A stretch of DNA of 64,000 bases, taken from NCBI RefSeq assembly GCF_003918875.1, contig NW_025766214.1:1054001-1118000 (forward strand), read 5' to 3'. This stretch comes from Haliotis rubra. Its lineage: Eukaryota. The position numbers and the translations under genes were made by a program. Of this stretch, positions 795 to 45,100 are shown one piece after another. Each line of letters opens with the position of its first letter. Position 1 is the first letter of the stretch. The notes under the pieces were generated by a model. The model ran no database searches. It was not told the origin of the DNA and saw only the letters and a list, made by a program, of their open reading frames with translations.

Positions 795-2436
795 CTCTAA
801 CATGTGTTACTTTTGTTAACCAGACCTGAAAACATTTCTATACGTAGGAAGCCCATTGGCTCCCTAAGTGTGGACAATGACATCGGGTGAATGTGTGCGT
901 GTGTGCATGCGTGTGCGCGGGGTGTCAGTTATTATTTGGTGTAATTATAGCGCTGCGTTGTTCAATGCATCTTTTCACGTCTCCTGGTATGAGAGTATGA
1001 TGCAGTCGGGGTTAAACGAATCGCCTTCAGCACTCTCTGCAGCTGATATTGTTCCACCACATCACGGTGGTGGTCTGTGTGAAACAACATCGAACCATAG
1101 TGACAGTATCCTTCAGCTGAGAAACGACACTGAGACGTTTGACTTTCTTAAGAATTCGTCGACAATGAACGTCAACAGGTAATACCGAGAGTCTACAGTA
1201 TCCGAACTGGTTGATTGTGTGTTATCGTACCCCCATTGTTGCTCGCGCTTTAAACTACAGGTTTACTTGCAACACTTATGTAAACTATACGAACATTCTG
1301 CATCATAGAATGATTTCATTCGTAAACCCTAACATGAAAAATGGTAAATATGTGTAATAATGTTGACGTATGACATCCCTACCGGTAACCAACCTTCACA
1401 AAATGGCGAGTCCACTGGCAGGAGTACTGGGGATTTTACAGGGGACTTTAGCTGATTCACAGTTCGTCACGTGAGTAACCAGACAAAGAGTGGAGAAAGA
1501 TCCATCAGGATACGATGACAATCATGCAGATCACAACCAGAACTCGACTCTCATGTACCCAAAATATTCTAATCAAACGACACAATTGAAAGTTTCATGT
1601 ACTTTATTTTACAACGTTAATGGTAACATCAGAAAACTAAAATAAACAGAGTGAAAATATAAAACGATTAGATCCATATATAAATTATCATTTGAAAGAA
1701 ATTACTCAACAGAAGCATATATATGAACTGAGATTCTACCTCACAGCTGCAAACCAACACATTCTCAAACAACAATTCAAATCTGCAGTAACAAATCAGA
1801 CCGTTCAGACCAAATGGGTTGGCCCGTTTTGACCGGCACCTGTAGGCCGTTGACAGAAATAATTCAGGTACATCTCTACGGTTTGTTGAACGTTTACCTA
1901 ACCTCGTAAGGTAAATCTGTGGTAGGCTGTTTGAGCTTCGTTTCGTGCTGTCTATATATGTGTGCTGACCCTTAAATCAGTCTTGGCACCCTCGTGGCAA
2001 CTTCGGGTAAGAACTGGTTACCCAGCAACCGTACGTCTTAACAGGCGGCATAATGGATGCGGTCGTCGAACTCGGCGATATAGGTCAATGTGTGTCATCC
2101 AACCCTAGCTGACGGTCTAGACACTCGCTCGTGATATCGATCACTGGATTGTCTCGTCCAGACTCGACTATTTACGGAACGCCATCATACAACTGTGCAG
2201 CCTTATAAATACCTAGAGAAGAAGTCATGTTTTGAGAGCTGATCTCAGTCCGAGAAGCCGCTGATCCGAATCCACCCGAACCCATCTTAGAAACAAAAGG
2301 CTTCTTCTGAGACAGGGCATGTACGAGGTTATATACGAAATGGTGATAATACACCCAAAACTCACAGCGTCTAGATCAAAATGTGACTGAATATGGTTTT
2401 GTGCAAGTTGTTCGAAATATCCCATGCAGTGACGAG

Positions 2437-2785
2437 GTGGTGGGATTGGGTTTAAAGTCGTGCTTGAGAATATTTCGCTCATATGACGACGTGCATGCGT
2501 GTGTATGTGTATGTGCGACTGCTTGTACTAGCCCAGGCTGAAGCTGGTTTTATAGTGCTAGCCCACTGAGATACCATGCCGCAGTGAAGCATGAATACCC
2601 CACTCAGACACATTATACTTACTCCGAGCCGACCAGTCCTTGTTGTACCCATTAATGCCGAGCGCCAGGCAGGGACCAACAAGTACCATATTTTAACGTC
2701 TTTTGGTATGACGCGGTCGGGGATCGAACCCGCGACCTTCCGCACTCCGGGCGGACGCTCTAACCACTACACCACGGAGGCGGTC
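2437..2785 (-). mobile_element. tRNA-derived SINE family B, full length, Meta-domain-like centre
   Basis: A box GGTGTAGTGG, B box GGTTCGATCC, central GTCATACCAAAAGAC..TGGTAC..CCCTGCCTGGCGCTCGGCATT; 12-bp TSD TGCAGTGACGAG. Confidence 0.88.
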
Positions 2786-2884
2786 TGCAGTGACGAGACT
2801 CGGCTGAGACACTGTACATTTTGGGGCAATAAACACGTCTTTGGTGAACACTTTAGCAACTGGGCCACCATTGTATGTCCAGCA

Positions 2885-3060
2885 AACAACGTTATAACGC
2901 TTACAACGAACTTGCACACAATGAAATATTTAGGGTTTTTCTGTCCTAAACACTTAGTGTCACTGTAAATTTTTAATTTTAAAAATGCGTATAACGAACT
3001 ATGGTTATGACGAACTAAAAATAGTGGTCCCTTTGAGTTCGTTATAAGCTTGGTTTACTG
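2885..3060. mobile_element. Tc1/mariner (pogo/Tigger-like) MITE, right arm
   Basis: Repeated ATAACGAAC motifs; ends GTTCGTTATAAGC..GGTTTACTG followed by TA. Confidence 0.55.
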
Positions 3061-4593
3061 TACTGTATCACGAAGATGACTTGATGGAGTGACATTCCTA
3101 CGCTCACTTGCACGATGCCTGTCAATCAGCTGGACACAGTACGGATAAGGTGTGAACGACAAATTTGTATCTGATCTGAAACACGGAGGCTTGGACTTTT
3201 CTGTTTTCCTAAACTGAAATTGTTGAATCATTGCTGATAGAAACAAGAACATTTCCAAAGTTGCCAATTGTTCTCCTAAGCAGGAACTTTGACCAATAGA
3301 AAAAGGAATCCATTGTTTGTGCTTTACGAAATGTCCTTTCTCATTCAGAAATCTCTCCGGTTTGAATTCGTCTGGGTTGTCCCAATGTTCTTGGTCAAAC
3401 AACGCTGATTCTAATACAGGTAATATCAGAGTGTCCTGTGGAATAAGGTATCCCCGGAACATAACATCACGGGAAGCAAATCGCCTGGCACCGTAAGGAT
3501 TCACGTTCACACACCTCAGTACCTCGGAAATGGTGGCTTGAACGTAAGGAAGGCTTTCTACGTCGGACATGTTTGGAGCACGATGTAAGCCTACGTTATC
3601 TTTGATTTCTTGATAAAATCTGTCCTGTACATCTGGGTAAGCTATGAAATAAAGAATACCCCACTGGATAGCAACAGCTGTGGGCTCCGAACCAGCAATC
3701 AACAAATTTGTAACAATATCAATAAGATTGTCGTGATTAACAGGTAAGCCCAGATTTTGGCACTCCTTTAAATATGCCGATACGAATGTCACATTGTGGT
3801 CATCAAAGTCCTTCTCAAGGCGTCTTAGTGAAGGTTTGATTATTTCATCCTCTGTAAATGCAATATTTTCGGTCAGCCGTTTCATATTGAATATATCTCC
3901 CGGCAAGTAACGCAGGTATGGCATAAACTCTAAAATGGCCGTCAAACTAAAATTCTCTTGTCGTCGTTTCAAATATTCAACAAATATTGGATCATCATCT
4001 TCGAATCGTTTGCCAAATAGAATCGAACATGTGACATTAGTGACAGCAAAGTTAATAAAAGATCGTAAATCCACATTTCGACAATGTTCGTCGTTGATAA
4101 GGCGCAGTAAATGACTGACTTCTTCGCCAGTCCGAATTTCCAAAATATCCTTTCCTGATCCTCTTGTGAAATCCCGGAGACAGACCTCCGCTATTCGCTT
4201 TTCTTCCATCCCAACTGTCACGGCCGTGTTCAGAATGCCGCGCCCATGATTGGGATACTCAGAAACGAACACGTTCGGTCGTTTGACGAACAAGTGCCCG
4301 TGTGTTGCAAGGCATTCTTTTATGATGTCATAACCGTTTATCACCACGACACGACGCAGTCCGAGGTATATACAGAATATATCACCGTAATCCTTCCTCC
4401 ATTTCTGTAATGCTTCTTTAATGTCCCGCGTTACTGAAAACATATTTCCAAACAAAGGGAAGCGCAATCTCGGTCCGGGCGGAAGTTGTGAGTGTCGTCT
4501 GCTGCTGTAAATCCACACAGCAACTAAAACAGACCCGACGACTGCCATGGTCGTGGTAACATTGTCACAAATGTTCTGCATTATCCGATCCAT
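3055..4593 (-). CDS. Cytochrome P450, CYP2-clan-like, single exon, atypical motifs (512 aa)
   Basis: Uninterrupted ORF with N-terminal anchor, PPGP hinge, I-helix AGSEPT, K-helix EVLR, PERF and heme motif FSIGQSSCLG. Confidence 0.92.
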   Translation of the reverse strand: MDRIMQNICDNVTTTMAVVGSVLVAVWIYSSRRHSQLPPGPRLRFPLFGNMFSVTRDIKEALQKWRKDYGDIFCIYLGLRRVVVINGYDIIKECLATHGHLFVKRPNVFVSEYPNHGRGILNTAVTVGMEEKRIAEVCLRDFTRGSGKDILEIRTGEEVSHLLRLINDEHCRNVDLRSFINFAVTNVTCSILFGKRFEDDDPIFVEYLKRRQENFSLTAILEFMPYLRYLPGDIFNMKRLTENIAFTEDEIIKPSLRRLEKDFDDHNVTFVSAYLKECQNLGLPVNHDNLIDIVTNLLIAGSEPTAVAIQWGILYFIAYPDVQDRFYQEIKDNVGLHRAPNMSDVESLPYVQATISEVLRCVNVNPYGARRFASRDVMFRGYLIPQDTLILPVLESALFDQEHWDNPDEFKPERFLNEKGHFVKHKQWIPFSIGQSSCLGEQLATLEMFLFLSAMIQQFQFRKTEKSKPPCFRSDTNLSFTPYPYCVQLIDRHRASERRNVTPSSHLRDTVQ

Positions 4594-5361
4594 ACTAACT
4601 ATCTGCAGCTGCGAGGGAGAGTGTTATGAACAACCATCTCCCAAACACACGAACGTGTCGAGACACATTTTACCTGTCACCTAATTCGTCAAATTGGAAC
4701 GACCCATGAGCGCGCAGTCAATATTAGGTGATTAAGGCTCGCTGCACTTGGCGCACCGTCTCGCAATGCTCTATGCTCTGTTATCGACTGACGGCGAGTG
4801 GAAAATGTCCACTTGAAGGGACGAATAGCCACGGTGAAGCCTGAATAGTCAATCCACTCGCAATATTGAGATTCAGGAATAACGTGCGCCAATATTACTA
4901 CGGAATGAGAAAGCAGACTTAAGTTAATAATTTTACTGTTGTCCGTAAGTAAGTTAAAAGTTGTAAGTTAAATGATATTCAGTTAACAGCCGTATTTACT
5001 CACTCAGAGACCATGTAATATGGTCTCTGACTCACTGTATGAGAATATAATTATATAATATTACTTGATGAGTGAACGTTCTAACTACAAGGCTATGCAG
5101 GCACCCCATACAATGGGTGAACATAAGATCAAAGATCATACGCATAAACCGATTCGACTATCGGGTTAGGCTATTTAACCAATAATATACACACACCCAC
5201 CCCCACCCCACCCCCACCCACACCCCGGAATAAACAGTGTTGTACCTCATAAAACGCCCCGTATTATAAGCATACATATAATATCAAACACCTGTCATTC
5301 ATCTGTATATGTCTCAGTAGCCTACGGGCTTTCAAGTAACAGCATATTTACTATTGAGGCT

Positions 5362-5492
5362 GGATTTGTAGCCTATTGGTGCTCGCTAGTCATGCCGAAG
5401 AACCAGATTCGAATCCCCACACGGGTATATTGTGTGAAGCTCATTTCTGGTGTCCGCTACGATGATATTGATAAGAGCGGCATAAAACAACA
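5362..5492 (+). mobile_element. Degenerate SINE family A
   Basis: gtagcct..ttcgaatccccacacgggta..tgtgtgaagc..ttctggtgtcc..gcggcataaaac. Confidence 0.7.
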
Positions 5493-5774
5493 TACAATCC
5501 TCTGGTGCTAAAATCACAAGTAACTAGAAGTGTAAATGGAGTTTATACAAAAGGCTGACTATATCTTGAGTCTGTGTATACTGACATGTAATCTACACTG
5601 GAAATACGGATCCCGCACAAACTTCACCCATTATATGTTTTTGTACATATTGAACATTTATGATTTCGAAAATGCCATTGGTGATCGGGTTTACGTACAA
5701 CAAAAAGACTCTTAACTAAAAATACGTTGACAATTACAGTATCCCTGTTCTGTTATAAAGAGCACAGTGCAAAT

Positions 5775-7262
5775 CTACTGCCTGGGTACAGACATAACCT
5801 TGAAGGGTTGCGGTTTAAGCACTGCTCCAGGTAAGGGCTCCTTAGACAGAGGCGGTTCATCTTCCGGTGGCAGGAAGTGAAACCTCTGGACGAGCCCTGT
5901 GATGAATAGGAACAGCTCCATCCGGGCAAGTGACTCTCCCGGACACGCCCTCTTTCCCAGCGAGAACGGAATAAATTCCTCGGGTTTCACAAATTTACCT
6001 TCAGCACTAAGAAACCTCTCCGGTCGAAATTGTCCAGGATTTTCCCAAATTTCAGGATCCATCATGATAGAGTCTAAGTTTGGGAAGATGATGCAACCAG
6101 CTGGGAGATGATATCCTTTGAGCACAATGTCTTCCGTGACCCCGTGGAATCCAGCTATTGGTGAAATATTGGCGATCCTCTGAACCTCTGTAATGGTTGC
6201 TTCTATAAAAGGAAGCTTCAGCTTGTCAGTCATCTCAGGACGTTTCTCTGTTCCAATATTGTCCTCGATTTCCCTGAAGCATTTCGCCTGGATGTCTTGA
6301 TGCATTGTCAGATACAACAGTATCCATTGAATTGTAGTCGACGTTGTGTCAGTTCCAGCAATAAACAAATCTCCGACGACTTTCACCAGATTGTCAAATC
6401 CAATGGACGTCTCCACCCCTTGTTTCTCCTTAACCTTCATCTCCCTTATGTATGCAGCGATGAAGTCGTCAATGTTATTTTCATCAAAGGCCTTGAGGTG
6501 TTCTTCAATGGACGGTTTTATCAGTCTGTCCTCGTAAAACGCTATGTTCTTAACAGTCCTGTGATAAAGGAACAGATCACCAGGAAGATGCTTGGCAAAA
6601 GGGATGAAGTTTAGTCCACCAAGCTTCCCAGCTGCCTTGAAGTTCTCGTCTGTCTTTTTAAGATATTCTATAAACAGTGGGTCGTCATGCTGGAATCGTC
6701 TCCCAAACACCATAGAACAGATGATATTGGACACAGATGTCTGGATGATGGGATCTGTGTCGTATTTGTGTCCCTTCTGATCTGCAATGACCTCCAGACA
6801 AACCTGCACTTCCTCATTAATCTTCTCTTGGAGTATGTTTTTACCCATTCCAAAGTCTCTCAGTGTAGAGAGTGTTAGTCTTCTCTGTTCCTTCCACACC
6901 TCCCCGTTGCTTGATATAACGCCCTTATTTTGGAAAAGATCGTTAAACACAACTGCATAGGGCCTCACGGCGAAGACATCGCTATTCTTCACCAGCGCCT
7001 CCTTAACCGTATCATATCCGTTCAGCACTATGGTTAAACGGTTGCCTAGATAGAGAGTGAATAAATCTCCGTATTGTTTCCTCCACTCTTGGAACTGCTC
7101 TCTGAAGTCCGGTTTCATTGACACAAGGTTGCCTAAGACTGGTACACCCCTCGGCCCAGGAGGCAGCCCAGATGGGCGTCTGGTACTGTACCACAGTGCA
7201 AGCAAGCATACCCCTGATACCAGGATCGGAGTCGTATATCCGATGAAAAATCCGTCCAACAT
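5775..7262 (-). CDS. Cytochrome P450, CYP2-clan-like, single exon (495 aa)
   Basis: TM anchor, PPGP, WKEQR, AGTDTT, EVQR, PERF, FSLGKRACPG; all canonical. Confidence 0.96.
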   Translation of the reverse strand: MLDGFFIGYTTPILVSGVCLLALWYSTRRPSGLPPGPRGVPVLGNLVSMKPDFREQFQEWRKQYGDLFTLYLGNRLTIVLNGYDTVKEALVKNSDVFAVRPYAVVFNDLFQNKGVISSNGEVWKEQRRLTLSTLRDFGMGKNILQEKINEEVQVCLEVIADQKGHKYDTDPIIQTSVSNIICSMVFGRRFQHDDPLFIEYLKKTDENFKAAGKLGGLNFIPFAKHLPGDLFLYHRTVKNIAFYEDRLIKPSIEEHLKAFDENNIDDFIAAYIREMKVKEKQGVETSIGFDNLVKVVGDLFIAGTDTTSTTIQWILLYLTMHQDIQAKCFREIEDNIGTEKRPEMTDKLKLPFIEATITEVQRIANISPIAGFHGVTEDIVLKGYHLPAGCIIFPNLDSIMMDPEIWENPGQFRPERFLSAEGKFVKPEEFIPFSLGKRACPGESLARMELFLFITGLVQRFHFLPPEDEPPLSKEPLPGAVLKPQPFKVMSVPRQ

Positions 7263-7954
7263 TGTTACTCTGTCCCTCCGTATATTCCTTTTCCTCGGAC
7301 CAATCTCCCTATTTGCTGTCTAACCCCGATTCACACCACACCGTATTGAGGCTTCGGGTTAGTGTGTTCACGCAGGGCAGGGCATATAAACACACTAGGT
7401 TATATTTAACTACGTGTCAAGGACATTCATGTGCATTCAAAATACGCCTTGGGTTCATCGTTTCATTTAACAAACTGGGCTGCGTGTTTTGTTGACATAA
7501 ACAGCTGCACTTTAGGTAGCGATACGCAGCGTGATCTGCATACTCAGGTCATTTTCGGTTGTTGTGGCGTTGTTGAACCACAGGATTTTTTAGTTGTTCA
7601 CAAATATACTTTTATCGACCTGTGTTCACAGACCAGTGCATCCTAGCTACCAGGCCAAAGGTCATGGGTCAATAAAAATACGTACACAGCTACGAATTCC
7701 TTTGGTTGAAGGAACGGTCAGGAGGTTATGTAGAGTAGTCTACGGGGCTGACTTGGACATATAGTCATGATCTTTGTGTAAATAGCGAGATCATTTACCG
7801 CTAGATCCATTAAGACTAAATTTGACACTTGAATCAAACACGTGGGTGGGGAGGGGCGGGCTTTACGTCACCTCGGTATTATTCCAGCCATGTAATAGCA
7901 CCAAATTTGATAGCAAGCAATTCGTCATTCACATTACATAGTTTACAATTTATG

Positions 7955-8345
7955 CTACAGGTCAACTTTCATTAGGGAGGTAACAATGAGATGCCCACTC
8001 AAGCGGGAAAACAGATCTTTCAGATTTGTCGCTTCGTAATGTGAATCCCTTGCAGTAGAAAAGTCCACACAGTCAAGCAGAATATGCTTGATGGTGAACA
8101 CTTCATCGCAAGAGACACACATAGGAGGTCCATCTCCGTCTGTTTTCAGCAGATAGTCATGATTAAACCGACTGGCCAATTATTCATCGTCGTAAAACTA
8201 CCTCATCACGTCTTGACTGACGACCCAATATAACCGATTGTTGGTTTCAATTCATGAAATTCATTTCTTCTTACTTGGGCGTCCCACCTTTTTTGCATGA
8301 GTTCTCGAGTATAACTTCTGATAGTGAGTGCTGTAGCATTAACTG
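7955..8345 (-). mobile_element. LINE ORF2 3' fragment (I/Nimb/Ingi-group-like), disrupted
   Basis: HDYLLK..PPMCVSCDEVFTIKHILLDCVDF zinc knuckle typical of RNase H-bearing non-LTR elements; upstream QKRWD..HELKP frame broken. Confidence 0.72.
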
Positions 8346-8764
8346 AAAGTATATATGACTGACTGGTATGCATGTATATCACTGTATGTATGTATATCAT
8401 GTATTTAAAAAACAACCCGTACAAGTGACCTCCAAACGTTGATTACATTTAGGTGAAAGTTCATCTCTGGAACTATTTCTGAGTAGACTGTTTTTGATAC
8501 CGAGCTTAACACTGACTCTTGGGTCTGTATATCTGGGCCAGGGTCCTTCACGAAAGGCTCCATGGTCAAAGTCCACGTTTCGTCATTTACACATACAGTC
8601 TGTGATAGTTTCGCGGACTTTACATCTAATCAAAAAAATGCGTCTTCCCGATTCGCCAGCCTGTACATTCCCTGTATGTTCGCCGGAGGTAAGATAAAGA
8701 ATGACCGGTTTGCCCTACAGTCGTGCCCGTTAAGTAACTAGTAAACACGTAAGGTAAAACTTAG

Positions 8765-9132
8765 TCGACTGGTGTGTGAAGCTATCACTGCAAAAACTGT
8801 ATCTCGACTGGTGTGTAAATCTTCAGCCTTGAATCTCGACTGATGTGTAAATCTACAGCCCTGTGTCTCGACTGGTGTGTAAATTCACAGCCCTGCATCT
8901 CGACTGGTGTGTAAATTCACAGCCCTGCATCTCGACTGGTGTGTAAATCCACAGCCCTGTATCTCGACTGGTGTGTAAATCCACAGCCCTGTATCTCGAC
9001 TGGTGTGTAATTCTACAACCCTGTGTCTCGACTGGTGTGTAATTCTACAGCCCTGTATCTCGACTGGTGTGTAAATCTACAGCCCTGTATCTCGACTGGT
9101 GTGTAAATCTATATCCCTGTGTCTCGACTGGT
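8765..9132. repeat. 32-bp minisatellite (TATCTCGACTGGTGTGTAAATCTACAGCCCTG), ~11 copies
   Basis: Direct inspection. Confidence 0.93.
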
Positions 9133-9200
9133 TTTTGAAACCCTTTTCATATATGAAACAAGTAGCTCTATTCTGAAACAGTGGAAGCATCAAAGCGACA

Positions 9201-10691
9201 ATGCTCAGTATGTTGTTCACGGACATTCCGACAACGCTTCTCACTTGTGGTGTCGGTGCCCTCATGCTGTGGCTGACGTTCCGGAGACCGCCAGGGACAC
9301 CCCCTGGACCAGGCTTCCCCTTACCACTTCTCGGCCATTTGCTGTCCATTGGGAAAGATCCGAAGAAGAAATTTCGAGAATGGCACAAACAATATGGCGA
9401 CATTTTTAGTGTGTACATTGGTAATCGGTTAGTGATCGTCATGAATGGTTATGAGGTCTTAAAAGATGCTTTTGTGAAGCACGGTGATGTTTTCTCAGAC
9501 CGTCCTCATGTTTTCGTGATTGATGAGATAAGCAACGGCATGGGCGTGCTGGGAACATCCGGGCAAGTCTGGAAGGAACAAAGGCGGTTCACGCTGTCCA
9601 CGCTGAGAGACTTTGGTATGGGCAAGAACATGCTGCAGGTGAAGATTAACGAAGAATCAGCCTCGTTTCTTGAGGCTATTGCAGAGATGAAAGGACAGAA
9701 GTTTGATTTCCGAGATTTGACACACACGGCGGTTTCCAACATCATCACATCTGTAGTGTTTGGCAAAAGATTTGTCTACGGGGACAAATTCTTCAAGGAG
9801 CTGACTTCTAGAATTGATGAAAACCTTCAGTCAGCAGGAGCAACAGCCGGCTTGAACTTCATTCCTCTTGCTCGGTATATTCCGGGAGACCCATTCAAGT
9901 TTAAGAGGACGTTGGCGAATCTGGCGTTCTTTGTTACTAATCTGACAAAACCGTCTGCAGCTGAACATTTGAAAGACTATGATGAGTCGAACATTGGTGA
10001 TTATGTATCAGCTTACATTAGAGAGATCAAGCGGAAGGAGAGTGAAAACATCGAGTCGTCCATTAATTTCGATAACCTGGAAAAAGTGATTGGTGATTTG
10101 TTCGTTGCTGGAACTGAAACCACTGCCACTACTATAAGATGGGCAGTTCTACTGTTCTTGAAATATCCAGAAATTCAAGAAAAATGTTTCCAAGAAATTA
10201 AGACGAACATCGGTCAAGAGAGGTTGCCAGAGATGTCGGACAAGCTGAAGTTACCCTATGTTGAAGCAACTATAGCTGAGGTACAGAGAGTGGCCAACAT
10301 CATCCCCGTGTCAGTCTGGCACAGTGTCCCGTATGACATACAATTCAGGGGCTACACATTCCGTAAAGGAGTAACTATAGTGCCCAACATTGACTCTGTG
10401 CTCATGGACCCTGAAATCTTCAAAGATCCAGAGAGGTTTCAGCCAGAGAGATTTTTGGCTGACAATGGAAAGTTTGTGAAGCCCGATGAGTTCATTCCCT
10501 TCTTTCTGGGCAAGCGGGTTTGTCTTGGGGAATCCCTGGCAAGGATGGAGCTCTTCCTTTTCATCACAGCATTAATTCAACGTTTCGAGTTCCAACAACC
10601 TGGAGATGAGCAACCACCAACTATGGAGGCTGTGCCAGGAGTAACGTTTGCCCCTCGGCCATTTAAGTTCATTGCGGCTCCTAGAGTCTGA
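9201..10691 (+). CDS. Cytochrome P450, CYP2-clan-like, single exon (496 aa)
   Basis: TM anchor, PPGP, WKEQR, AGTETT, EVQR, PERF, FFLGKRVCLG; clear paralogue of 5775..7262. Confidence 0.96.
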   Translation: MLSMLFTDIPTTLLTCGVGALMLWLTFRRPPGTPPGPGFPLPLLGHLLSIGKDPKKKFREWHKQYGDIFSVYIGNRLVIVMNGYEVLKDAFVKHGDVFSDRPHVFVIDEISNGMGVLGTSGQVWKEQRRFTLSTLRDFGMGKNMLQVKINEESASFLEAIAEMKGQKFDFRDLTHTAVSNIITSVVFGKRFVYGDKFFKELTSRIDENLQSAGATAGLNFIPLARYIPGDPFKFKRTLANLAFFVTNLTKPSAAEHLKDYDESNIGDYVSAYIREIKRKESENIESSINFDNLEKVIGDLFVAGTETTATTIRWAVLLFLKYPEIQEKCFQEIKTNIGQERLPEMSDKLKLPYVEATIAEVQRVANIIPVSVWHSVPYDIQFRGYTFRKGVTIVPNIDSVLMDPEIFKDPERFQPERFLADNGKFVKPDEFIPFFLGKRVCLGESLARMELFLFITALIQRFEFQQPGDEQPPTMEAVPGVTFAPRPFKFIAAPRV

Positions 10692-39100: not shown

Positions 39101-42100
39101 AAAAACATGTAGTTTCAGAAGCTCTCCACTGTGTTTGTCAACTGTTTTAACTCAACCCAAGGCCACCTAGCCCCATGCCTACAGCACTATATGTAATGTA
39201 AATGCACACAGAGCTGTTGAAAAGAACAATATGGAGGATGAGCCCTGTGGTGGCTGAAACGACCTTGGTGATGGGCATAAGCTGCATCATCTGTTGTAGT
39301 TGTAAACATAACAAAAACATGGCTCATTTCCAACAACCGGTTTCATCTAGTGTCACTTTACCCCATACACGATGCACTCTACCATATCTCTGTCATACAG
39401 ATATAAGCATGTCTAATGTCATTAAAACAATTTCATTAAATCAGCCATACACATCATTTTACCATATTTTGTCATATATTTACAGTACAATTCAGTCAAA
39501 TCAGTCATACACATCATTTCACCATATGTTGTCATATATTTACAGTACAATTTAGTCAAATCAGTCATACACATCATTTTACCATATGTTGTCATATATT
39601 TACAGTACAATTCAGTCAAATCAGTCATACACATCATTTTACCATATTTTGTCATATATTTACAGTACAATTCAGTCAAATCAGTCATACACACCATTTT
39701 ACCATATTTTGTCATATATTTACAGTACAATTCAGTCAAACACGTCATTTTACCATATGTTGTAATATATTTACAGTACAATTTCATCAAATCATCCATA
39801 CACATCATTTTACCATATTTTGTCATATATTTACAGTACAATTCAGTCAAATCAGCCATACACAACATTTCACCATATTTTGTCATATATTTACAGTACA
39901 GTTCAGTCAAATCAGTCATACACATCATTTTACCATATTTTGTCATATATTTTTAGTGCAATTTCATCACATCAGTCATACAAGGCATTTCACCATATTA
40001 TGTCATACATTTTTAGTGCAATTTCATCACATCAGTCATACAAGTCATTTCACCATATTTTGTCATACATTTCTTGTGCAATTTCAACAAATCAGTCGTA
40101 CATGACATTTCACCATATTTTCTCATACATTTTTAGTGCAATTTCAACAAATCAGTCGTACGTCATTTCACCATATTTTGTTGCACATTTTTAGTGCAAT
40201 TTCAACAAATCAGTCATACATGTCATTTCACCATATTTTGCCAACATTTATAGTGTAACTTCATCATATCTGTTATACACTTCATTTCACCTAAGGTAAT
40301 ACCCAAGGCACATTTCCTGCCATTTCATATGCAAGATGCCTAAAACACCATTCAACCATTTATCTGCCATTGTTTGTTCCCTTTAATCATTCCTGAGATA
40401 CACTGTTGATGTATTTTCACCCAATAATCTAGTATCATATGTAAGATACATCCTTGAGTCCATTCACCATACAAGAAATACATTCTAGTGTAACTTCACA
40501 ACCTGTGAGAAACACTGATACATTCGTGTGTATGGTTTACATACAAGAAATACATTCTAGTGTAACTTCACAACACGTGACAAACACTGATACATTCGTG
40601 TGTATGGTTTACATACAAGAAATACATTCTAGTGTAACTTCACAACACGTGACAAACACTGATACATTCGTGTGTATGGTTTACATACAAGAAATACATT
40701 CTAGTGTAACTTCACAACACGTGACAAACACTGATACATTCGTGTGTATGGTTTACATACAAGAAATACATTCTAGTGTAACTTCACAACATGTGAGAAA
40801 CACTGATACATTCGTGTGGATGGTTTTACGCAATACTTCAGCAATATCACAGCGGGGGACACCAGAAATGGGCTTCACGCATTATACCCATGTGGGGAAT
40901 TGAACCAGGGTCACTGGGGTGATGAGCGAACACTTTGACCACTAGGCTACCCCACCCCCTCCACCAGAACGCTAATGCTTTAACCACTATGCTATCCCTC
41001 CTTTTATTATGTATCTACCTGAGCTGTCTTATCACAATGTGATCATTTCTAAGTCTGCCTTAAACCGAAAAATCTCAAATTCCTTCATCCTGTTTACATG
41101 TTTTATTGCTGGTATTAAGCAAAGGTAAATTATGTTGATCATCCATCCCACGGAGATCTTAATCTAAAATGTGAAACATAATATGTATAGCAAAAGATAT
41201 AAGAAACTGTTGTCCCATTGATTATAAACTAGTAAAAACCTTATTGCTCTTCATTTATGCATGCACAGAAACATTAAACTGCTCATGAATACTGCACATG
41301 ATATATGCAAGAAGCTTTGAGTACCGGTATACCATTAATCTTTTAGAGTAACATTTCTCTCTGGGACTCAGCATGCCAGCAATTCTGTGGGGCACAGGGT
41401 AACAAGACTGTTTAGGACCTGGAATAACCATGCTATCTGGGGTTTAGTATGACATATAGGACCTGCAATAACAGTACTCTCTGGGCCACTATGACATATA
41501 GGACCTGCAATAACAATACTCTCTGGGTCAGTATGACATATAGGACCTGCAATAACAGTACTCTCTGGGTCAGTATGACATATAGGACCTGCAAAAACAG
41601 TACTCTCTGGGTCAGTATGACATATAGGACCTGCAATAACAGTACTCTCTGGGTCAGTATGACATATAGGACCTGCAAAAACAGTACTCTCTGGGTCAGT
41701 ATGACATATAGGACCTGCAAAAACAGTACTCTCTGGGTTAGTATGACATATAGGACCTGCAAAAACAGTACTCTCTGGGTCAGTATGACATATAGGACCT
41801 GGAACAACAGTACTCTCTGAGTCAGTATGACATATAGGACCTGCAATAACAGTACTCTCTGAGTCAGTATGACATATAGGACCTGCAATAACAGTACTCT
41901 CTGGGTCAGTATGACATATAGGACCTGCAATAACAGTACTCTCTGGGTTAGTATGACATATAGGACCTGCAAAAACAGTACTCTCTGGGTCAGTATGACA
42001 TATAGGACCTGGAACAACAGTACTCTGAGTCAGTATGACATATAGGACCTGCAAAACAGTACTCTGAGTCAGTATGACATATAGGACCTGCAAAAACAGT

Positions 42101-45100
42101 ACTCTCTGAGTCAGTATGACATATAGGACCTGGGAACAACAGTACTCTCTGGGTCAGTATGACATATAGGACCTGCAAAAACAGTACATATCAGTATGAC
42201 ATATAGGACCTGCAAAACAGTACTCTCTGGGTCAGTATGACATATAGGACCTCTCTGGGTCAAAATATAGTGCAATAACAGTACTCTCTGGGTCAGTATG
42301 ACATATAGGACCTGCAATAACAGTACTCTCTGGGTCAGTATGACATATAGGACCTGCAATGACAAATAACAGTACTCTCTGGGTCAGTATGACATATAGG
42401 ACCTGCAATAACAGTACTCTCTGGGTCAGTATGACATATAGGACCTGCAATAACAGTACTCTCTGGGTCAGTATGACATATAGGACCTGCAAAAACAGTA
42501 CTCTCTGGGTCAGTATGACATATAGGACCTGGAACAACAGTACTCTCTGAGTCAGTATGACATATAGGACCTGCAAAAACAGTACTCTCTGAGTCAGTAT
42601 GACATATAGGACCTGGAACAACAGTACTCTCTGAGTCAGTATGACATATAGGACCTGCAAAAACAGTACTCTCTGGGTCAGTATGACATATAGGACCTGC
42701 AAAAACAGTACTCTCTGGGTCAGTATGACATATAGGACCTGCATAACAGTACTCTCTGGGTCAGTATAACATATAGGACCTGCAAAACGGTACTCTCTGG
42801 GTCAGTATGACATATAGGACCTGCAAAAACAGTACTCTCTGAGTCAGTATGACATATAGGACCTGCAATAACAGTACTCTCTGGGTCAGTATGACACATA
42901 GGACCTGGAACAACAGTACTCTCTGGGTCAGTATGACATATAGGACCTGGAACAACAGTACTCTCTGGGTCAGTATGACATATAGGACCTGCAATAACAG
43001 TACTCTCTGGGTTAGTATGACATATAGGACCTGCAATAACAGTACTCTCTGAGTCAGTATGACATATAGGACCTGGAACAACAGTACTTTCTGGGTCAGT
43101 ATGACACATAGGACCTGCAATAACAGTACTCTCTGGGTCAGTATGACATATAGGACCTGCAATAACAGTACTCTCTGAGTCAGTATGACATATAGGACCT
43201 GCAATAACAGTACTCTCTGAGTCAGTATGTCATATAGGACCTGCAATAACAGTACTCTCTGGGTCAGTATGTCATATAGGACCTGCAATAACAGTACTCT
43301 CTGAGTCAGTGTGTCATGTAGGACCTGCAATAACAGTACTCTCTGGGTTAGTATGACATATAGGACCTGCAATAACAGTACTCTCTGAGTCAGTATGACA
43401 TATAGGACCTGCAATAACAGTACTCTCTGAGTCAGTATGACATATAGGACCTGGAACAACAGTACTCTCTGGGTCAGTATGACATATAGGACCTGCAATA
43501 ACAGTACTCTCTGGGTCAGTATGACATACAGGACCTGCAATAATAGTACTCTCTGGGTTAGTATGACATATACGACCTGCAAAAACAGTACTCTCTGGGT
43601 CAGTATGACATATAGGACCTGGAACATCAGAACTCTCTGGGTCAGTATGACATATAGGACATCAGAACTCTCTGGGAAACACTCTTCAAGGTTTCATTGC
43701 TGATATTTTACAGCTCGAGTAGATATTGTACTTGCATCTGTTGCTTTATTCAAGTCTATAATACTCCTGGATAGACTGAATCTATGGCGGAAGTCCAGAG
43801 TAGAGAAACATACTTGTCACTAACAGTAACAATAGCTTACCCAAGGAACTATTTTTCTTACAATGGTACTGATTATGCTGCATTGTCTGTAAATATAGCA
43901 AAACATTGCCTCATAACATGCAAGCAAATTACTAATCCATTTAACATATTGTTATCAATCATTTTCATAAAAGAGTACAGGAAAAGATTACTTATCTCTA
44001 AACTCAATGTCATGTAACGAAATTTTCAAGAAGCACTCAATCAAAAGATTTTTGGTGAGTGAGTGAGTATGATTTTACGCAGCTTTTAGCAATATTTCAG
44101 CAATATTATTGCAGGGGACACAAGAAATGGGCTATACATTGTACCCATGTGGGGAATTGAACCCGGGTATTTGGCTTGACGACGAACGTTTTAGCCACTT
44201 GACTACCACACCGCCCCAAATGTTTTTGGTGTGTGTTAGCCTGTAAATATCAATCATAAAAATACTAATATGGATTTACACACTGCACATGAGAAGTTGA
44301 GTGAACTTGGTTTAACGCTGTTTTGAACAAGTACGTTGGAACAAGTATTACTTGGATGTACACCTTAACAGCATGCAGTGTGGTACTTTATGCAATAGTA
44401 ATATGTTGTAGGGACATGTAACAAAAGCTAACTTTGCACCATATAACTTATTATGTACACATTATACTGATGTAAGCCATCACAATAATGAAAGCATAGC
44501 TTTTGATGACTAAGACCTCAAACATTTCCCTTCACATGACTCCTGGAAGCTTTGACACACACGGTAGAAGCATGATAGACATGTGAGAAAAATCATGAGC
44601 CACCAACTGCTTACTGTTTCATCATATCCGTGGTGATGAATCATTGTCATTTGCAAACAAATGCACTCTCGGTCTCTTGAGGCAATTGGGGATTACCTAG
44701 ACCTGCTCAGACACATTTGGCTCATATTTGGCCCCAATACTGTAGCAGTTGTCAGTACAAATTCCCTGGTGTGAATTAAACATTTCCTATTTCAAGTATG
44801 TACACTGTTACAACTAATCTGGTTTGCTTGTGGTGACTCCTATTACACTGACAACAGAATTCGTATAGAGAAGGCTCAACTTTACATGAATGCAGCATTA
44901 CAATGCAATGTTAAAGTACCAGGTCAAAAACATGAACTTTGAAAGAAAGGTTTTCGGAAAAAATACATAAAAAATTAAATATTTCTGCCAAGGGCACTTA
45001 GTTTGGAACTTTAGATAAATCCCTGGGCAAACACGGTTAGAGATTTGTACCGTGCCAAAAGAAGAAAAAACCTGAGAATGCAGAAACTGTTGTTCACTAG

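What the first reader, a model, noticed from the sequence alone, without database searches (positions are those of the whole stretch)
3274..3696. P450 with rewired catalytic motifs: possibly not a standard monooxygenase
Seen: the I-helix reads AGSEPT (3679-3696), with Pro where the conserved Thr follows the acid (paralogues AGTDTT/AGTETT). The heme loop FSIGQSSCLG (3274-3303) lacks the conserved Arg, and WxxxR has lost its Trp (GMEEKR). The Cys ligand, ExxR, PERF and a full ORF are retained. Known: loss of the acid-alcohol Thr characterises P450s acting on peroxides or as isomerases (CYP5A1, CYP8A1, CYP74). Inference: either a neofunctionalised, perhaps oxylipin/peroxide-handling, enzyme beside two canonical paralogues, or an early pseudogene.
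Basis: partly seen in the sequence, partly recalled or inferred. Interest (0 to 1): 0.7.

Follow-up and report, generated by a model that had tools for sequence, protein, structure and literature searches.

The report
Conserved abalone P450 with altered catalytic motifs
An intact, single-exon abalone cytochrome P450 gene has lost three hallmark catalytic and haem-anchoring residues, yet natural selection has kept it unchanged across at least five abalone lineages, so it is a working enzyme of untested, possibly unusual chemistry and not a dying gene.

Summary
A 512-residue intronless P450 ORF (window 3055-4593, minus strand) reads AGSEPT in the I-helix, FSIGQSSCLG in the Cys loop and GMEEKR where WxxxR should be. 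Cys, ExxR and PERF are kept.

It is a CYP2-clan P450 (Pfam 2e-97; model pLDDT 88; best folds CYP2C8/2B4). It is the third gene of a tandem trio conserved in four Haliotis genomes.

**Pseudogene reading: refuted.**
- Five orthologues are intact and carry the same odd motifs, with synonymous turnover inside them.
- ML omega is 0.24, and omega = 1 is rejected (2ΔlnL 135).
- The I-helix and Cys-loop are the least variable parts of the protein.

**How rare the states are.** Among about 190 related domains, Pro at the Thr site occurs 3 times and a non-Arg at the loop site 1-2 times. Four or five conserved proximal basic residues are also lost. No closer relative exists outside Haliotis among 1.84 billion representatives.

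**Expression** is probable: transcriptome-sized assemblies hold the whole ORF. It is not proven.

**Chemistry** is untested. Non-canonical oxygen activation is plausible. The oxylipin/peroxide idea is speculation, because true hydroxylases without the Thr are known.

The scan had not reported this gene before. It had noted a different atypical P450 in the same genome.

The parts
3055..4593 (-). Gene A: intronless 512-codon CYP2-clan P450 ORF (stop included), the subject of the finding
   Evidence: ORF list. PF00067 E 2.1e-97. Best PDB sequences are CYP2B4/2C19/2R1. AF2 model pLDDT 88.3, pTM 0.88. Foldseek top hits CYP2C8/2D6/2B4, TM 0.81/0.89.
3679..3696 (-). I-helix oxygen-activation motif AGSEPT (residues 300-305). 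Pro304 replaces the conserved Thr (CYP2B4 T302). Glu303 and Thr305 are kept.
   Evidence: Sequence. Alignment to CYP2B4. Invariant in 5 orthologues, with synonymous changes at G301 and E303. Pro at this site in 3 of about 191 background domains.
3274..3303 (-). Cys-ligand loop FSIGQSSCLG (residues 431-440). Cys438 and Phe431 are kept. Q435 replaces K/R and S436 replaces the near-invariant Arg (CYP2B4 R434).
   Evidence: Background at this site is R188/Q1/S1. Codons AGT/AGC, TCC/TCA and TGC/TGT vary synonymously among orthologues.
4195..4212 (-). C-helix GMEEKR (residues 128-133), in place of WxxxR(R). W121 is G, R122 is M, and R125 is K (Q in three orthologues).
   Evidence: Background at these sites is W 102/141 and R 125/141.
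3481..3486 (-). Arg370-Arg371, replacing the Pro-His of CYP2B4 (P368-H369, a haem-propionate contact). A possible compensating haem anchor (inference).
   Evidence: alignment. Background is P113 at 370 and H144/R39 at 371. R/K370-R371 is kept in all orthologues.
3259..3261 (-). Thr445, replacing the conserved proximal Arg/Lys (CYP2B4 R443) in the L-helix start (GEQLATLE)
   Evidence: alignment. Background is R105/K61/T1 of 189. Invariant in 5 orthologues.
3514..3525 (-). K-helix ExxR (EVLR, residues 357-360), retained
   Evidence: Invariant in all 95 sequences of A3.
3349..3360 (-). PERF motif (residues 412-415), retained
4501..4560 (-). N-terminal hydrophobic helix (residues 12-31), followed by the RRHSQLPPGP hinge. 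This is a microsomal-type membrane anchor.
   Evidence: Translation. Model helix 12-31.
5775..7262 (-). Gene B: canonical intronless paralogue (AGTDTT, FSLGKRACPG), 40% identical to gene A
   Evidence: dN/dS 0.07-0.10.
9201..10691 (+). Gene C: canonical intronless paralogue (AGTETT, FFLGKRVCLG), 39% identical to gene A
   Evidence: dN/dS 0.135-0.20.

Best explanation
Gene A is a functional, ER-anchored haem-thiolate P450 of the CYP2 clan. It most likely arose by local duplication next to two canonical paralogues in the abalone lineage. It then passed through a burst of change and has since been held under ordinary purifying selection. The burst did two things. It re-lined the distal oxygen-activation groove: TETTSTT became SEPTAVA, so Thr302 is Pro and Thr305 is Val. 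It also stripped the proximal face and haem-propionate cradle of conserved basic or aromatic residues (W121G, R122M, R125K/Q, K433Q, R434S, R443T). Cys438, Phe431, ExxR, PERF and the overall fold were kept. My committed reading is as follows. The enzyme still binds haem through Cys438, perhaps re-anchored by Arg370/Arg371. It no longer uses the Thr-assisted proton relay that converts ferric-hydroperoxo to Compound I, and it docks reductase or b5 less strongly. It therefore probably performs a specialised reaction on one endogenous or dietary, lipid-like substrate by one of two routes: substrate- or water-assisted protonation, or peroxo/peroxide-type chemistry. What is shown: gene integrity, conservation, rarity of the states, fold, and clustering of the changes. 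What is inferred: haem binding, altered oxygen activation, weaker partner docking, and the substrate class.
For: The gene is intact and a clear P450. Orthologues in H. asinina, H. rufescens, H. cracherodii and one Logan contig share every odd motif, and the three genome loci are syntenic. NG86 dN/dS is 0.18-0.20 with bootstrap CI 0.13-0.28. ML omega is 0.242, with lnL -3495.5 against -3563.3 at omega = 1. Residues 301-330 have 2 variable sites among the five orthologues and residues 421-450 have 1, the lowest values along the protein. Synonymous turnover occurs inside the motifs. In the tree the gene A clade is sister to B+C with a stem of 0.95, against 0.42-0.48 for B and C. There are 13 lineage-specific signature positions. 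Five lie in the 29-residue proximal segment 419-447 (binomial p = 5e-4), and two lie in the I-helix groove. Gene A keeps 4-5 of 10 proximal basic residues, against a median of 8 in 180 relatives and 9 in genes B and C. K433, R122, R125, R126 and R133 lie at the CYP2B4-b5 interface (PMC4330534). CYP152 peroxygenases carry Pro at the Thr position together with an altered Cys loop (PMC5818669). One other gastropod P450 (P0065) independently combines E-P with loss of the loop Arg (Fisher p about 0.001 on tiny counts).
Against: No biochemical data exist, and haem binding is only inferred. Gene A deviates at only 5 of 62 columns conserved at 80% or more, which is no more than a typical relative, so the re-lining is narrow. 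A Bulinus CYP2U1-like protein has GGTEPT with an otherwise canonical loop, so Pro at this site may be tolerated in ordinary enzymes. True hydroxylases lack the Thr (P450eryF), and human CYP2D6 lacks the acid residue (AGMVTT). About 4-7% of relatives have equally few proximal basic residues. Arg at the 371 site is common (39 of 190) even when the loop Arg is present, so compensation is not demonstrated. The sister grouping with B+C has only SH-aLRT 81.
Confidence: 0.55

Rival explanations
1. Gene A is an ordinary CPR-dependent monooxygenase. The substitutions are tolerated and compensated: Glu303, Thr305 and ordered water or substrate supply protons, and Arg370/Arg371, Lys132 and Arg133 hold the propionates. 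The gene is then just a divergent detoxification or biosynthetic CYP2.
For: The CYP2 fold and microsomal anchor are normal. The acid Glu303 and second Thr305 are kept. Only 5 of 62 highly conserved columns deviate. P450eryF hydroxylates without the Thr. A Bulinus CYP2U1-like protein has E-P with a canonical loop. R126, R133, K139 and R422-equivalent basic residues remain. From my own recollection, not checked here: clan-7 P450s such as CYP7A1 lack both the Thr and the loop Arg yet use CPR.
Against: The loop Arg is 188 of 190 in relatives. From my own recollection: its substitution in human CYP17A1, CYP11B1, CYP19A1 and CYP2C19 abolishes activity. The rare changes coincide on both faces of the haem and are the most constrained parts of the protein. 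Proximal charge is in the lowest 4-7% of relatives.
Confidence: 0.28
2. This is the reader's specific idea: a reductase-independent enzyme that rearranges fatty-acid hydroperoxides or prostaglandin endoperoxides, working like CYP74, CYP5A1 or CYP8A1.
For: The proton-relay Thr and several partner-docking basic residues are lost. CYP74, CYP8A1 and CYP5A1 need neither O2 nor electron donors and have an altered I-helix groove (PMC10813956). From my own recollection: H2O2 and prostaglandin-endoperoxide chemistry have been linked to spawning in abalone (Morse et al. 1977), so such substrates plausibly exist.
Against: No sequence or fold affinity to CYP74/5/8 was found; all best matches are CYP2. The Cys loop has canonical length, and no Asn or His replaces the Thr. 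Glu303 is retained. No substrate, pathway neighbour or expression pattern points to oxylipins. The genomic neighbours are two canonical P450s and a hAT/ZBED-like ORF.
Confidence: 0.1
3. Gene A is a haem-poor or catalytically dead pseudo-enzyme, kept for a binding, scaffolding or regulatory role.
For: Three to four haem-propionate contacts are changed (W121G, R125K/Q, R434S, H369R). From my own recollection: loop-Arg mutants of human P450s fail to incorporate haem.
Against: Cys438, Phe431, Gly434, Gly440 and Glu441 are invariant, and the Cys-loop segment is the most conserved of the protein, with 1 variable site in residues 421-450. The I-helix groove is equally constrained. This pattern is expected for a working active site.
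Confidence: 0.06
4. Gene A is an early pseudogene drifting neutrally.
For: Hallmark residues are lost. The window allele differs from the run contigs by 8 nonsynonymous and 6 synonymous changes, on small counts.
Against: The ORF is intact in five taxa at dS up to 0.5. Omega is 0.24, with omega = 1 rejected. The motifs are identical, with synonymous turnover.
Confidence: 0.01

Closest known systems
Vertebrate CYP2 family microsomal monooxygenases (CYP2B4, 2C8/9/19, 2R1, 2D6) and mollusc 'CYP2U1/2J-like' proteins
   Same: They share the fold (TM 0.81/0.89-0.91), 28-32% identity, the N-terminal anchor with PPGP hinge, ExxR, PERF, the Phe-x6-Cys loop length and the Cys ligand. Gene A falls inside mollusc clan-2 sequences in the tree.
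   Different: Thr302 is Pro, Thr305 is Val, the loop Arg434 is Ser, Lys433 is Gln, Arg443 is Thr, Trp121 is Gly and Arg125 is Lys/Gln. There is a 2-residue insert after F135 and a basic C-terminal tail of about 20 residues.
CYP152 peroxygenases (P450 BSbeta, SPalpha, OleT)
   Same: They have Pro at the position of the conserved Thr, together with a remodelled Cys-loop and proximal face where redox partners dock (PMC5818669).
   Different: CYP152 has Arg-Pro, where the Arg binds the fatty-acid carboxylate. Gene A has Glu-Pro. CYP152 lacks the Phe seven residues before Cys, and gene A keeps it (F431). CYP152 enzymes are bacterial, soluble and unrelated in clan. They are not among the sequence or fold matches.
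CYP74 clan, CYP5A1 and CYP8A1 (hydroperoxide and endoperoxide isomerases)
   Same: They lack the monooxygenase oxygen-binding I-helix signature and do not depend on redox partners (PMC10813956). That is the direction in which gene A's substitutions point.
   Different: There is no homology beyond the superfamily level. From my own recollection: CYP74 has an insertion in the Cys loop and an Asn in the I-helix groove. Gene A has a normal-length loop and Pro.
P450eryF (CYP107A1) and other hydroxylases without the Thr
   Same: The conserved Thr is naturally replaced in an enzyme under selection (PMC10741444).
   Different: EryF has Ala, keeps a His/Arg-type loop and uses a substrate hydroxyl. It is bacterial and soluble. 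Gene A has Pro and additionally loses the propionate anchors.
P0065, an unnamed gastropod transcript-like contig (SRR10323723, SRR3401917)
   Same: It independently shows A-E-P in the I-helix plus loss of the loop Arg (RQAC), within the same mollusc clan-2 radiation.
   Different: It sits in a different clade, with Babylonia and Batillaria sequences. It keeps Trp121, Arg125 and Arg443. No close relatives were found that could test conservation.

Membership tests
Cytochrome P450 superfamily (PF00067) | Profile match above the curated threshold | tested here: met
   327 bits against a cutoff of 22.8, covering profile positions 1-460 of 462.
Cytochrome P450 superfamily (PF00067) | Cys thiolate ligand in an FxxGxxxCxG loop, K-helix ExxR, and PERF | tested here: met
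   F431...C438-L-G440, E357xxR360 and P412ERF are present. All are invariant in 5 orthologues.
Cytochrome P450 superfamily (PF00067) | P450 fold | tested here: met
   AF2 pLDDT 88.3, pTM 0.88. Foldseek gives CYP2C8/2B4/2D6 at E about 1e-32.
Cytochrome P450 superfamily (PF00067) | Haem binding with a 450-nm CO spectrum | not testable with these tools
   This needs recombinant protein.
CYP2 clan | Closest characterised relatives and tree position lie within clan 2 | tested here: met
   The 38 best PDB sequences are all CYP2. Gene A nests among mollusc 2U1/2J/2B-like proteins, sister to genes B and C.
Canonical O2/CPR-dependent monooxygenase signature | Acid-alcohol pair (D/E-T) in the I-helix | tested here: not met
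   The pair is E303-P304. The background is T172/S11 of 191.
Canonical O2/CPR-dependent monooxygenase signature | Arg (or His) two residues before the Cys ligand | tested here: not met
   The residue is S436. The background is R188 of 190.
Canonical O2/CPR-dependent monooxygenase signature | C-helix WxxxR | tested here: not met
   The motif is G128xxxK132, with Q132 in three orthologues.
Canonical O2/CPR-dependent monooxygenase signature | Basic proximal docking surface | tested here: inconclusive
   Gene A has 4-5 of 10 basic positions, against a median of 8. But 13 of 180 relatives have 5 or fewer.
CYP74 / CYP5A1 / CYP8A1 peroxide isomerases | Sequence or fold membership | tested here: not met
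   No CYP74, CYP5 or CYP8 chain is among the 60 best sequence matches or the 50 best fold matches that were displayed (314 sequence matches and at least 500 fold matches in all). The displayed matches are all other families.
CYP74 / CYP5A1 / CYP8A1 peroxide isomerases | Turnover of hydroperoxide or endoperoxide without O2 or reductase | not testable with these tools
   This needs an enzyme assay.
CYP152 peroxygenases | Arg-Pro replacing the acid-alcohol pair, and absence of the Phe seven residues before Cys | tested here: not met
   Gene A has Glu-Pro, not Arg-Pro, and F431 is present.
Pseudogene | Disrupted frame or neutral evolution (omega near 1) | tested here: not met
   Five intact ORFs were found. 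Omega is 0.24, and the LRT against omega = 1 gives 2*deltalnL = 135.

The most novel reading that the evidence does not exclude
Gene A would be an animal CYP2-clan P450 that has become independent of reductase and O2. It would rearrange or use lipid peroxides (fatty-acid hydroperoxides or prostaglandin endoperoxide, or H2O2 as co-substrate). That would be a further, independent origin of CYP74/CYP5/CYP8/CYP152-like chemistry, reached by the same two-sided re-lining of the haem pocket (Thr to Pro, plus loss of the loop Arg and proximal charges). The same combination appears convergently in another gastropod P450 (P0065). It could be tied to peroxide- or prostaglandin-triggered physiology in abalone.
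Probability: 0.12. Interest if true: 0.8.

Novelty: new variant of a known kind. Interest (0 to 1): 0.45.

Why it matters
The Thr after the I-helix acid and the Arg two residues before the Cys ligand are among the most conserved residues in P450s. From my own recollection, substitutions of that Arg in human steroidogenic and drug-metabolising P450s are loss-of-function alleles. Here a CYP2-clan enzyme has lacked both, plus the WxxxR pair, under purifying selection across abalone divergences of dS up to 0.5.

That makes it a natural experiment on two questions: how a microsomal P450 can hold haem and activate oxygen (or peroxide) without those residues, and whether the two changes are mechanistically coupled. 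If the enzyme proves to be peroxide-driven or partner-independent, it would be a new route to such chemistry in animals and a useful scaffold. If it proves to be an ordinary hydroxylase, it would show that these 'essential' residues are dispensable in the right context.

Either outcome can be tested directly with one recombinant protein and two revertants. In practical terms, the gene is currently annotated only as a generic '2B4/2H2/2J5-like' P450.

Tried and rejected
1. **Expression, read laying.** Transcript ends, strand and level could not be read. The gene-A contigs end at a repeat (about 5124-5167) in RNA-like and DNA-like runs alike, and they diverge from the window 3' of 2380. No AATAAA lies near the contig ends.

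2. **Logan contig L003 (DRR299178).** It is collinear with genomic DNA and ends in repeats. It therefore adds an orthologue but no expression evidence.

3. **Literature.** Searches for abalone CYP2 genes or for this motif combination found nothing on this gene.

4. **Solved structures.** A PDB search with the I-helix segment alone found no solved P450 with E-P among the five alignments it displays.

5. **P0065.** A homologue search to test conservation of its E-P / no-Arg state found no relative above 48% identity, so that lead stops.

6. **Stem-branch test.** I did not attempt a branch-site test on the gene-A stem. Synonymous sites between A and B/C (40% amino-acid identity) are saturated.

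7. **Repeat at 2425-2785.** ARAGORN finds no tRNA there, so 'tRNA-derived SINE' remains an impression from a B-box-like GGTTCGATCCC.

8. **Model coordinates.** They are not exposed to scripts, so distances from Arg370/371 to the haem site could not be measured.

9. **CYP7-clan precedent.** Monooxygenases lacking both residues are cited from my own recollection. I could not verify this with the tools.

Full report
**1. What is at the coordinates**

Reading the minus strand of window 2400-5200 and listing ORFs shows one uninterrupted 512-codon ORF at 3055-4593 (gene A).
- AGSEPT is encoded at 3696-3679.
- FSIGQSSCLG is at 3303-3274.
- GMEEKR is at 4212-4195.
- EVLR (ExxR) is at 3525-3514.
- PERF is at 3360-3349.

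Two more intronless P450 ORFs lie next to it: gene B (5775-7262, minus) and gene C (9201-10691, plus). They have canonical AGTDTT/AGTETT, FSLGKRACPG/FFLGKRVCLG and VWKEQRR.

One refinement comes from the residue-by-residue alignment to CYP2B4. WxxxR has lost both Trp (G128) and Arg (K132).

**2. What kind of protein it is**

All three ORFs match Pfam PF00067 end to end. Gene A scores 327 bits and genes B and C score 391 and 382 bits.

The 38 best solved-structure sequences are all CYP2 family members, at E 1e-64 to 1e-70. An AlphaFold2 model built on a 95-sequence alignment has mean pLDDT 88.3 and pTM 0.88, and its I-helix (287-318) is continuous through Pro304. Foldseek returns CYP2C8, 2D6, 2B4, 2B6 and 2A6 at TM 0.81/0.89-0.91.

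Residues 12-31 form a hydrophobic helix followed by RRHSQLPPGP, which is the microsomal anchor and hinge. This is a CYP2-clan, ER-type P450.

**3. Organism and orthologues**

The word-index search found only two close proteins: 90% identity in Haliotis asinina and 85% in H. rufescens. The next best hit was 35%. Cluster look-ups added H. cracherodii and one Logan contig.

The window is therefore an abalone genome. The window's own three proteins are in NCBI on a 1.5-Mb contig. My guess is H. rubra or a close relative, which I did not verify.

The genomic loci show the same gene order, C (opposite strand), then B, then A, in H. asinina, H. rufescens and H. cracherodii. A 659-residue hAT/ZBED-like ORF follows in each. 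All five gene-A orthologues are single intact ORFs.

**4. Are the odd motifs conserved?**

Yes. AGSEPTAVAIQWGILYFIAYPDVQDR and HFVKHKQWIPFSIGQSSCLGEQLATLE are identical in all five. G128 is invariant. K132 is Q in the North-Pacific group.

The codons show synonymous turnover inside the motifs: G301 GGT/GGC/GGG, E303 GAG/GAA, G434 GGT/GGC, S436 AGT/AGC, S437 TCC/TCA, C438 TGC/TGT, G440 GGA/GGT and R371 CGA/CGG. Selection is therefore acting on the amino acids, including the unusual Ser436.

**5. Selection**

| Gene | Nei-Gojobori dN/dS |
|---|---|
| A | 0.18-0.20 (bootstrap 95% about 0.13-0.28) |
| B | 0.07-0.10 |
| C | 0.135-0.20 |

These were measured at dS 0.22-0.76. A codon model on the five gene-A orthologues gives omega 0.242, with lnL -3495.54. 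Fixing omega at 1 gives lnL -3563.26, so 2ΔlnL is 135 with 1 degree of freedom.

Of 116 variable positions, only 2 fall in residues 301-330 and 1 in residues 421-450. The rewired parts are the most constrained parts. The pseudogene alternative is refuted.

**6. How unusual the states are**

An exhaustive HMMER search of 1.84 billion representatives, using a profile of three orthologues, returned the H. rufescens protein at 1154 bits. The best single domain of any other protein scored 347 bits. Nothing closer than generic mollusc clan-2 P450s exists in that library, so the lineage is so far seen only in Haliotis. One caveat applies: few annotated vetigastropod genomes exist.

I aligned 141 domains from that search and 50 more from a second search to the profile. 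The states at the key sites are:

| Site (CYP2B4 numbering) | Background states | Gene A |
|---|---|---|
| Thr302 | T172 / S11 / P3 / A3 | P |
| Arg434 | R188 / Q1 / S1 | S |
| Arg443 | R105 / K61 / T1 | T |
| Lys433 | R104 / K45 / P19 / Q3 | Q |
| Trp121 | W 102 of 141 | G |
| Arg125 | R 125 of 141 | K/Q |
| His369 | H144 / R39 | R |

Seen in proportion, gene A departs from the majority residue at only 5 of 62 columns that are at least 80% conserved. This is about the median for its relatives. The rewiring is narrow and targeted, not a general decay.

**7. Where the lineage-specific changes sit**

Thirteen positions are invariant in the five orthologues, present in 2% or fewer of about 190 relatives, and have a clear majority residue elsewhere. 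They are C74, V103, T155, D199, P304, V307, Y367, V393, H421, W428, Q435, S436 and T445.
- Five lie in the 29-residue proximal segment 419-447 (binomial p = 5e-4). Four of these remove a conserved positive charge.
- Two lie in the I-helix groove, which changes from TETTSTT to SEPTAVA.

I counted K/R at ten proximal positions homologous to CYP2B4 residues 122, 125, 126, 133, 139, 421, 422, 433, 434 and 443. Gene A has 5 (4 in the North-Pacific group). The median in 180 relatives is 8, and genes B and C both have 9. Thirteen of the 180 relatives have 5 or fewer. K433, R122, R125, R126 and R133 are at the CYP2B4-cytochrome b5 interface (PMC4330534).

**8. History**

In an ML tree of 79 domains, the gene-A clade (support 100) is sister to B+C, with SH-aLRT 81. 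This support is weak. The stem of gene A is 0.95 substitutions per site, against 0.48 and 0.42 for B and C from the same node. Within Haliotis, the A branches are no longer than the C branches.

With the physical adjacency, this fits a local duplication, an episode of fast change, and then stable constraint.

**9. Expression**

The run search found no run on record as RNA. However, three assemblies of only 37-65 Mb (X1 and X3 from study P1, X17 from study P6) each hold the complete ORF on a contig of about 2.66 kb. A 1.08-Gb assembly from study P6 (X15) behaves like genomic DNA. Four observations point the same way:
- The A:B contig depth ratio is 2.0, 1.1 and 3.8 in the small sets, against 1.1 in X15.
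- The gene-B contigs stop at 7318-7335 in the small sets, about 60-70 nt upstream of its ATG.
- The X15 contig runs on past 7600.
- Bins beyond 7423 are empty in the small sets.

This pattern is what transcriptomes would give, so transcription of A and B is probable. The tool marks the RNA label as a guess, contigs cannot show ends or strand, and the gene is intronless. I therefore treat expression as likely, not shown.

The contig allele differs from the window at 14 CDS positions, 8 nonsynonymous and 6 synonymous. One is A306S, next to the motif. The frame is intact.

**10. Mechanistic reading**

Established knowledge, cited:
- The I-helix GxE/DTT/S Thr is the catalytic residue of the oxygen-activation groove, the WxxxR Arg binds a haem propionate, and PFxxGxRxCxG carries the ligand (PMC13411725).
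- In most P450s the acid-alcohol pair relays protons to the iron-oxygen species. In CYP152 peroxygenases the pair is replaced by Arg-Pro and the proximal Cys loop is altered. Those enzymes take H2O2 directly (PMC5818669).
- CYP74, CYP8A1 and CYP5A1 need neither O2 nor donors and have a different I-helix groove (PMC10813956).

Gene A shares the direction of these changes on both faces of the haem: Pro at the Thr site, a hydrophobic groove, no loop Arg, and fewer proximal charges.

Against over-reading:
- P450eryF is a true hydroxylase with Ala at the Thr site (PMC10741444).
- Human CYP2D6 has Val at the acid site.
- A Bulinus CYP2U1-like protein has GGTEPT with a normal loop.
- From my own recollection, clan-7 enzymes lack both residues yet use CPR.

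My committed reading, with confidence 0.55: gene A is a working haem-thiolate enzyme whose oxygen activation no longer uses the Thr relay and whose partner docking is weakened. It acts on a specific substrate by substrate- or water-assisted protonation or by peroxo/peroxide-type chemistry. Arg370-Arg371, which replaces Pro-His, may re-anchor the haem; this is inference.

The rivals and their confidences are:

| Rival | Confidence |
|---|---|
| Ordinary compensated monooxygenase | 0.28 |
| Haem-poor pseudo-enzyme | 0.06 |
| Pseudogene | 0.01 |

**11. A possible second instance**

P0065 is a 547-residue protein on two transcript-length Logan contigs from different runs. It sits in a different gastropod clade, with Babylonia and Batillaria sequences. 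It has FAAGAEPV and FSTGRQAC.

So Pro at the Thr site and loss of the loop Arg co-occur in two independent lineages, out of 4 lineages with Pro and 2-3 without Arg. Fisher p is about 0.0006-0.002 on very small counts. P0065 has no close relatives, so its conservation cannot be tested. This is a hint that the two changes are coupled, and no more than that.

**12. Comparison and novelty**

Membership in the P450 superfamily and the CYP2 clan was tested and met. The three sequence signatures of the canonical monooxygenase were tested and not met. Membership in CYP74/5/8 or CYP152 was tested and not met.

The gene is annotated in RefSeq only as '2B4-like', '2H2-like' or '2J5-like', and I found no paper on it. 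I class it as a new variant of a known kind.

This gene had not been reported by the scan before.

Noticed in passing
window 2425-2785: This is a 361-bp high-copy repeat with a B-box-like GGTTCGATCCC, lying 270 nt downstream of the gene-A stop. It is absent from the contigs of all four runs laid, which join 2424 to 2786 with 12 shared bases, as a target-site duplication would give. It looks like an insertion polymorphism or a recent SINE-like insertion. ARAGORN calls no tRNA there.
   Followed up: partly
window 3055-10691; L001, L002, L004: All three clan-2 P450 genes are single-exon ORFs. The trio keeps its order and orientation in H. asinina, H. rufescens and H. cracherodii, followed by a 659-residue hAT/ZBED-like ORF about 3.3 kb downstream of gene A. 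An intronless tandem cluster suggests an origin by retroposition followed by duplication.
   Followed up: partly
window 3055-3117 (residues 492-512 of gene A): This is a basic C-terminal tail (RHRASERRNVTPSSHLR...) that extends about 20 residues beyond where genes B and C and most relatives end. It is partly conserved in the orthologues and is modelled as disordered (pLDDT 45-53).
   Followed up: no
L005 76-1719, L006 76-1719 (protein P0065): This is a transcript-length contig present in two independent runs. It encodes a gastropod clan-2 P450 with A-E-P in the I-helix and RQAC instead of RRxC in the Cys loop, which is an independent occurrence of the same pair of changes. The organism was not identified.
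   Followed up: partly
window 39422-48189: Several long minisatellite arrays give repetitive ORFs of 170-288 codons on the minus strand, with peptide periods such as [17 protein letters not shown] and [13 protein letters not shown]. They look like non-coding tandem repeats, not genes.
   Followed up: no
proteins P0018-P0031 and others: Many mollusc database proteins of 780-1480 residues contain two to four complete P450 domains. Examples are Batillaria P0018, and P0019 whose two domains are nearly identical. These are probably adjacent intronless tandem genes fused by gene prediction, and they inflate whole-protein scores in searches.
   Followed up: partly
window 3055-4593 versus run contigs: The window allele differs from the contig allele of the same species label at 14 coding sites, 8 of them nonsynonymous (D57G, H161N, N214K, A219S, I220F, A306S, D324E, D405H). 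At positions 57 and 161 the contig allele matches the other species, so the window allele carries derived changes.
   Followed up: partly
window 4594-5775: The 1.18-kb spacer between the gene-B stop and the gene-A start is almost fully covered by the RNA-like contigs, except for a repeat at about 5125-5285. Gene A may therefore have a long 5' UTR or be reached by read-through from gene B.
   Followed up: no
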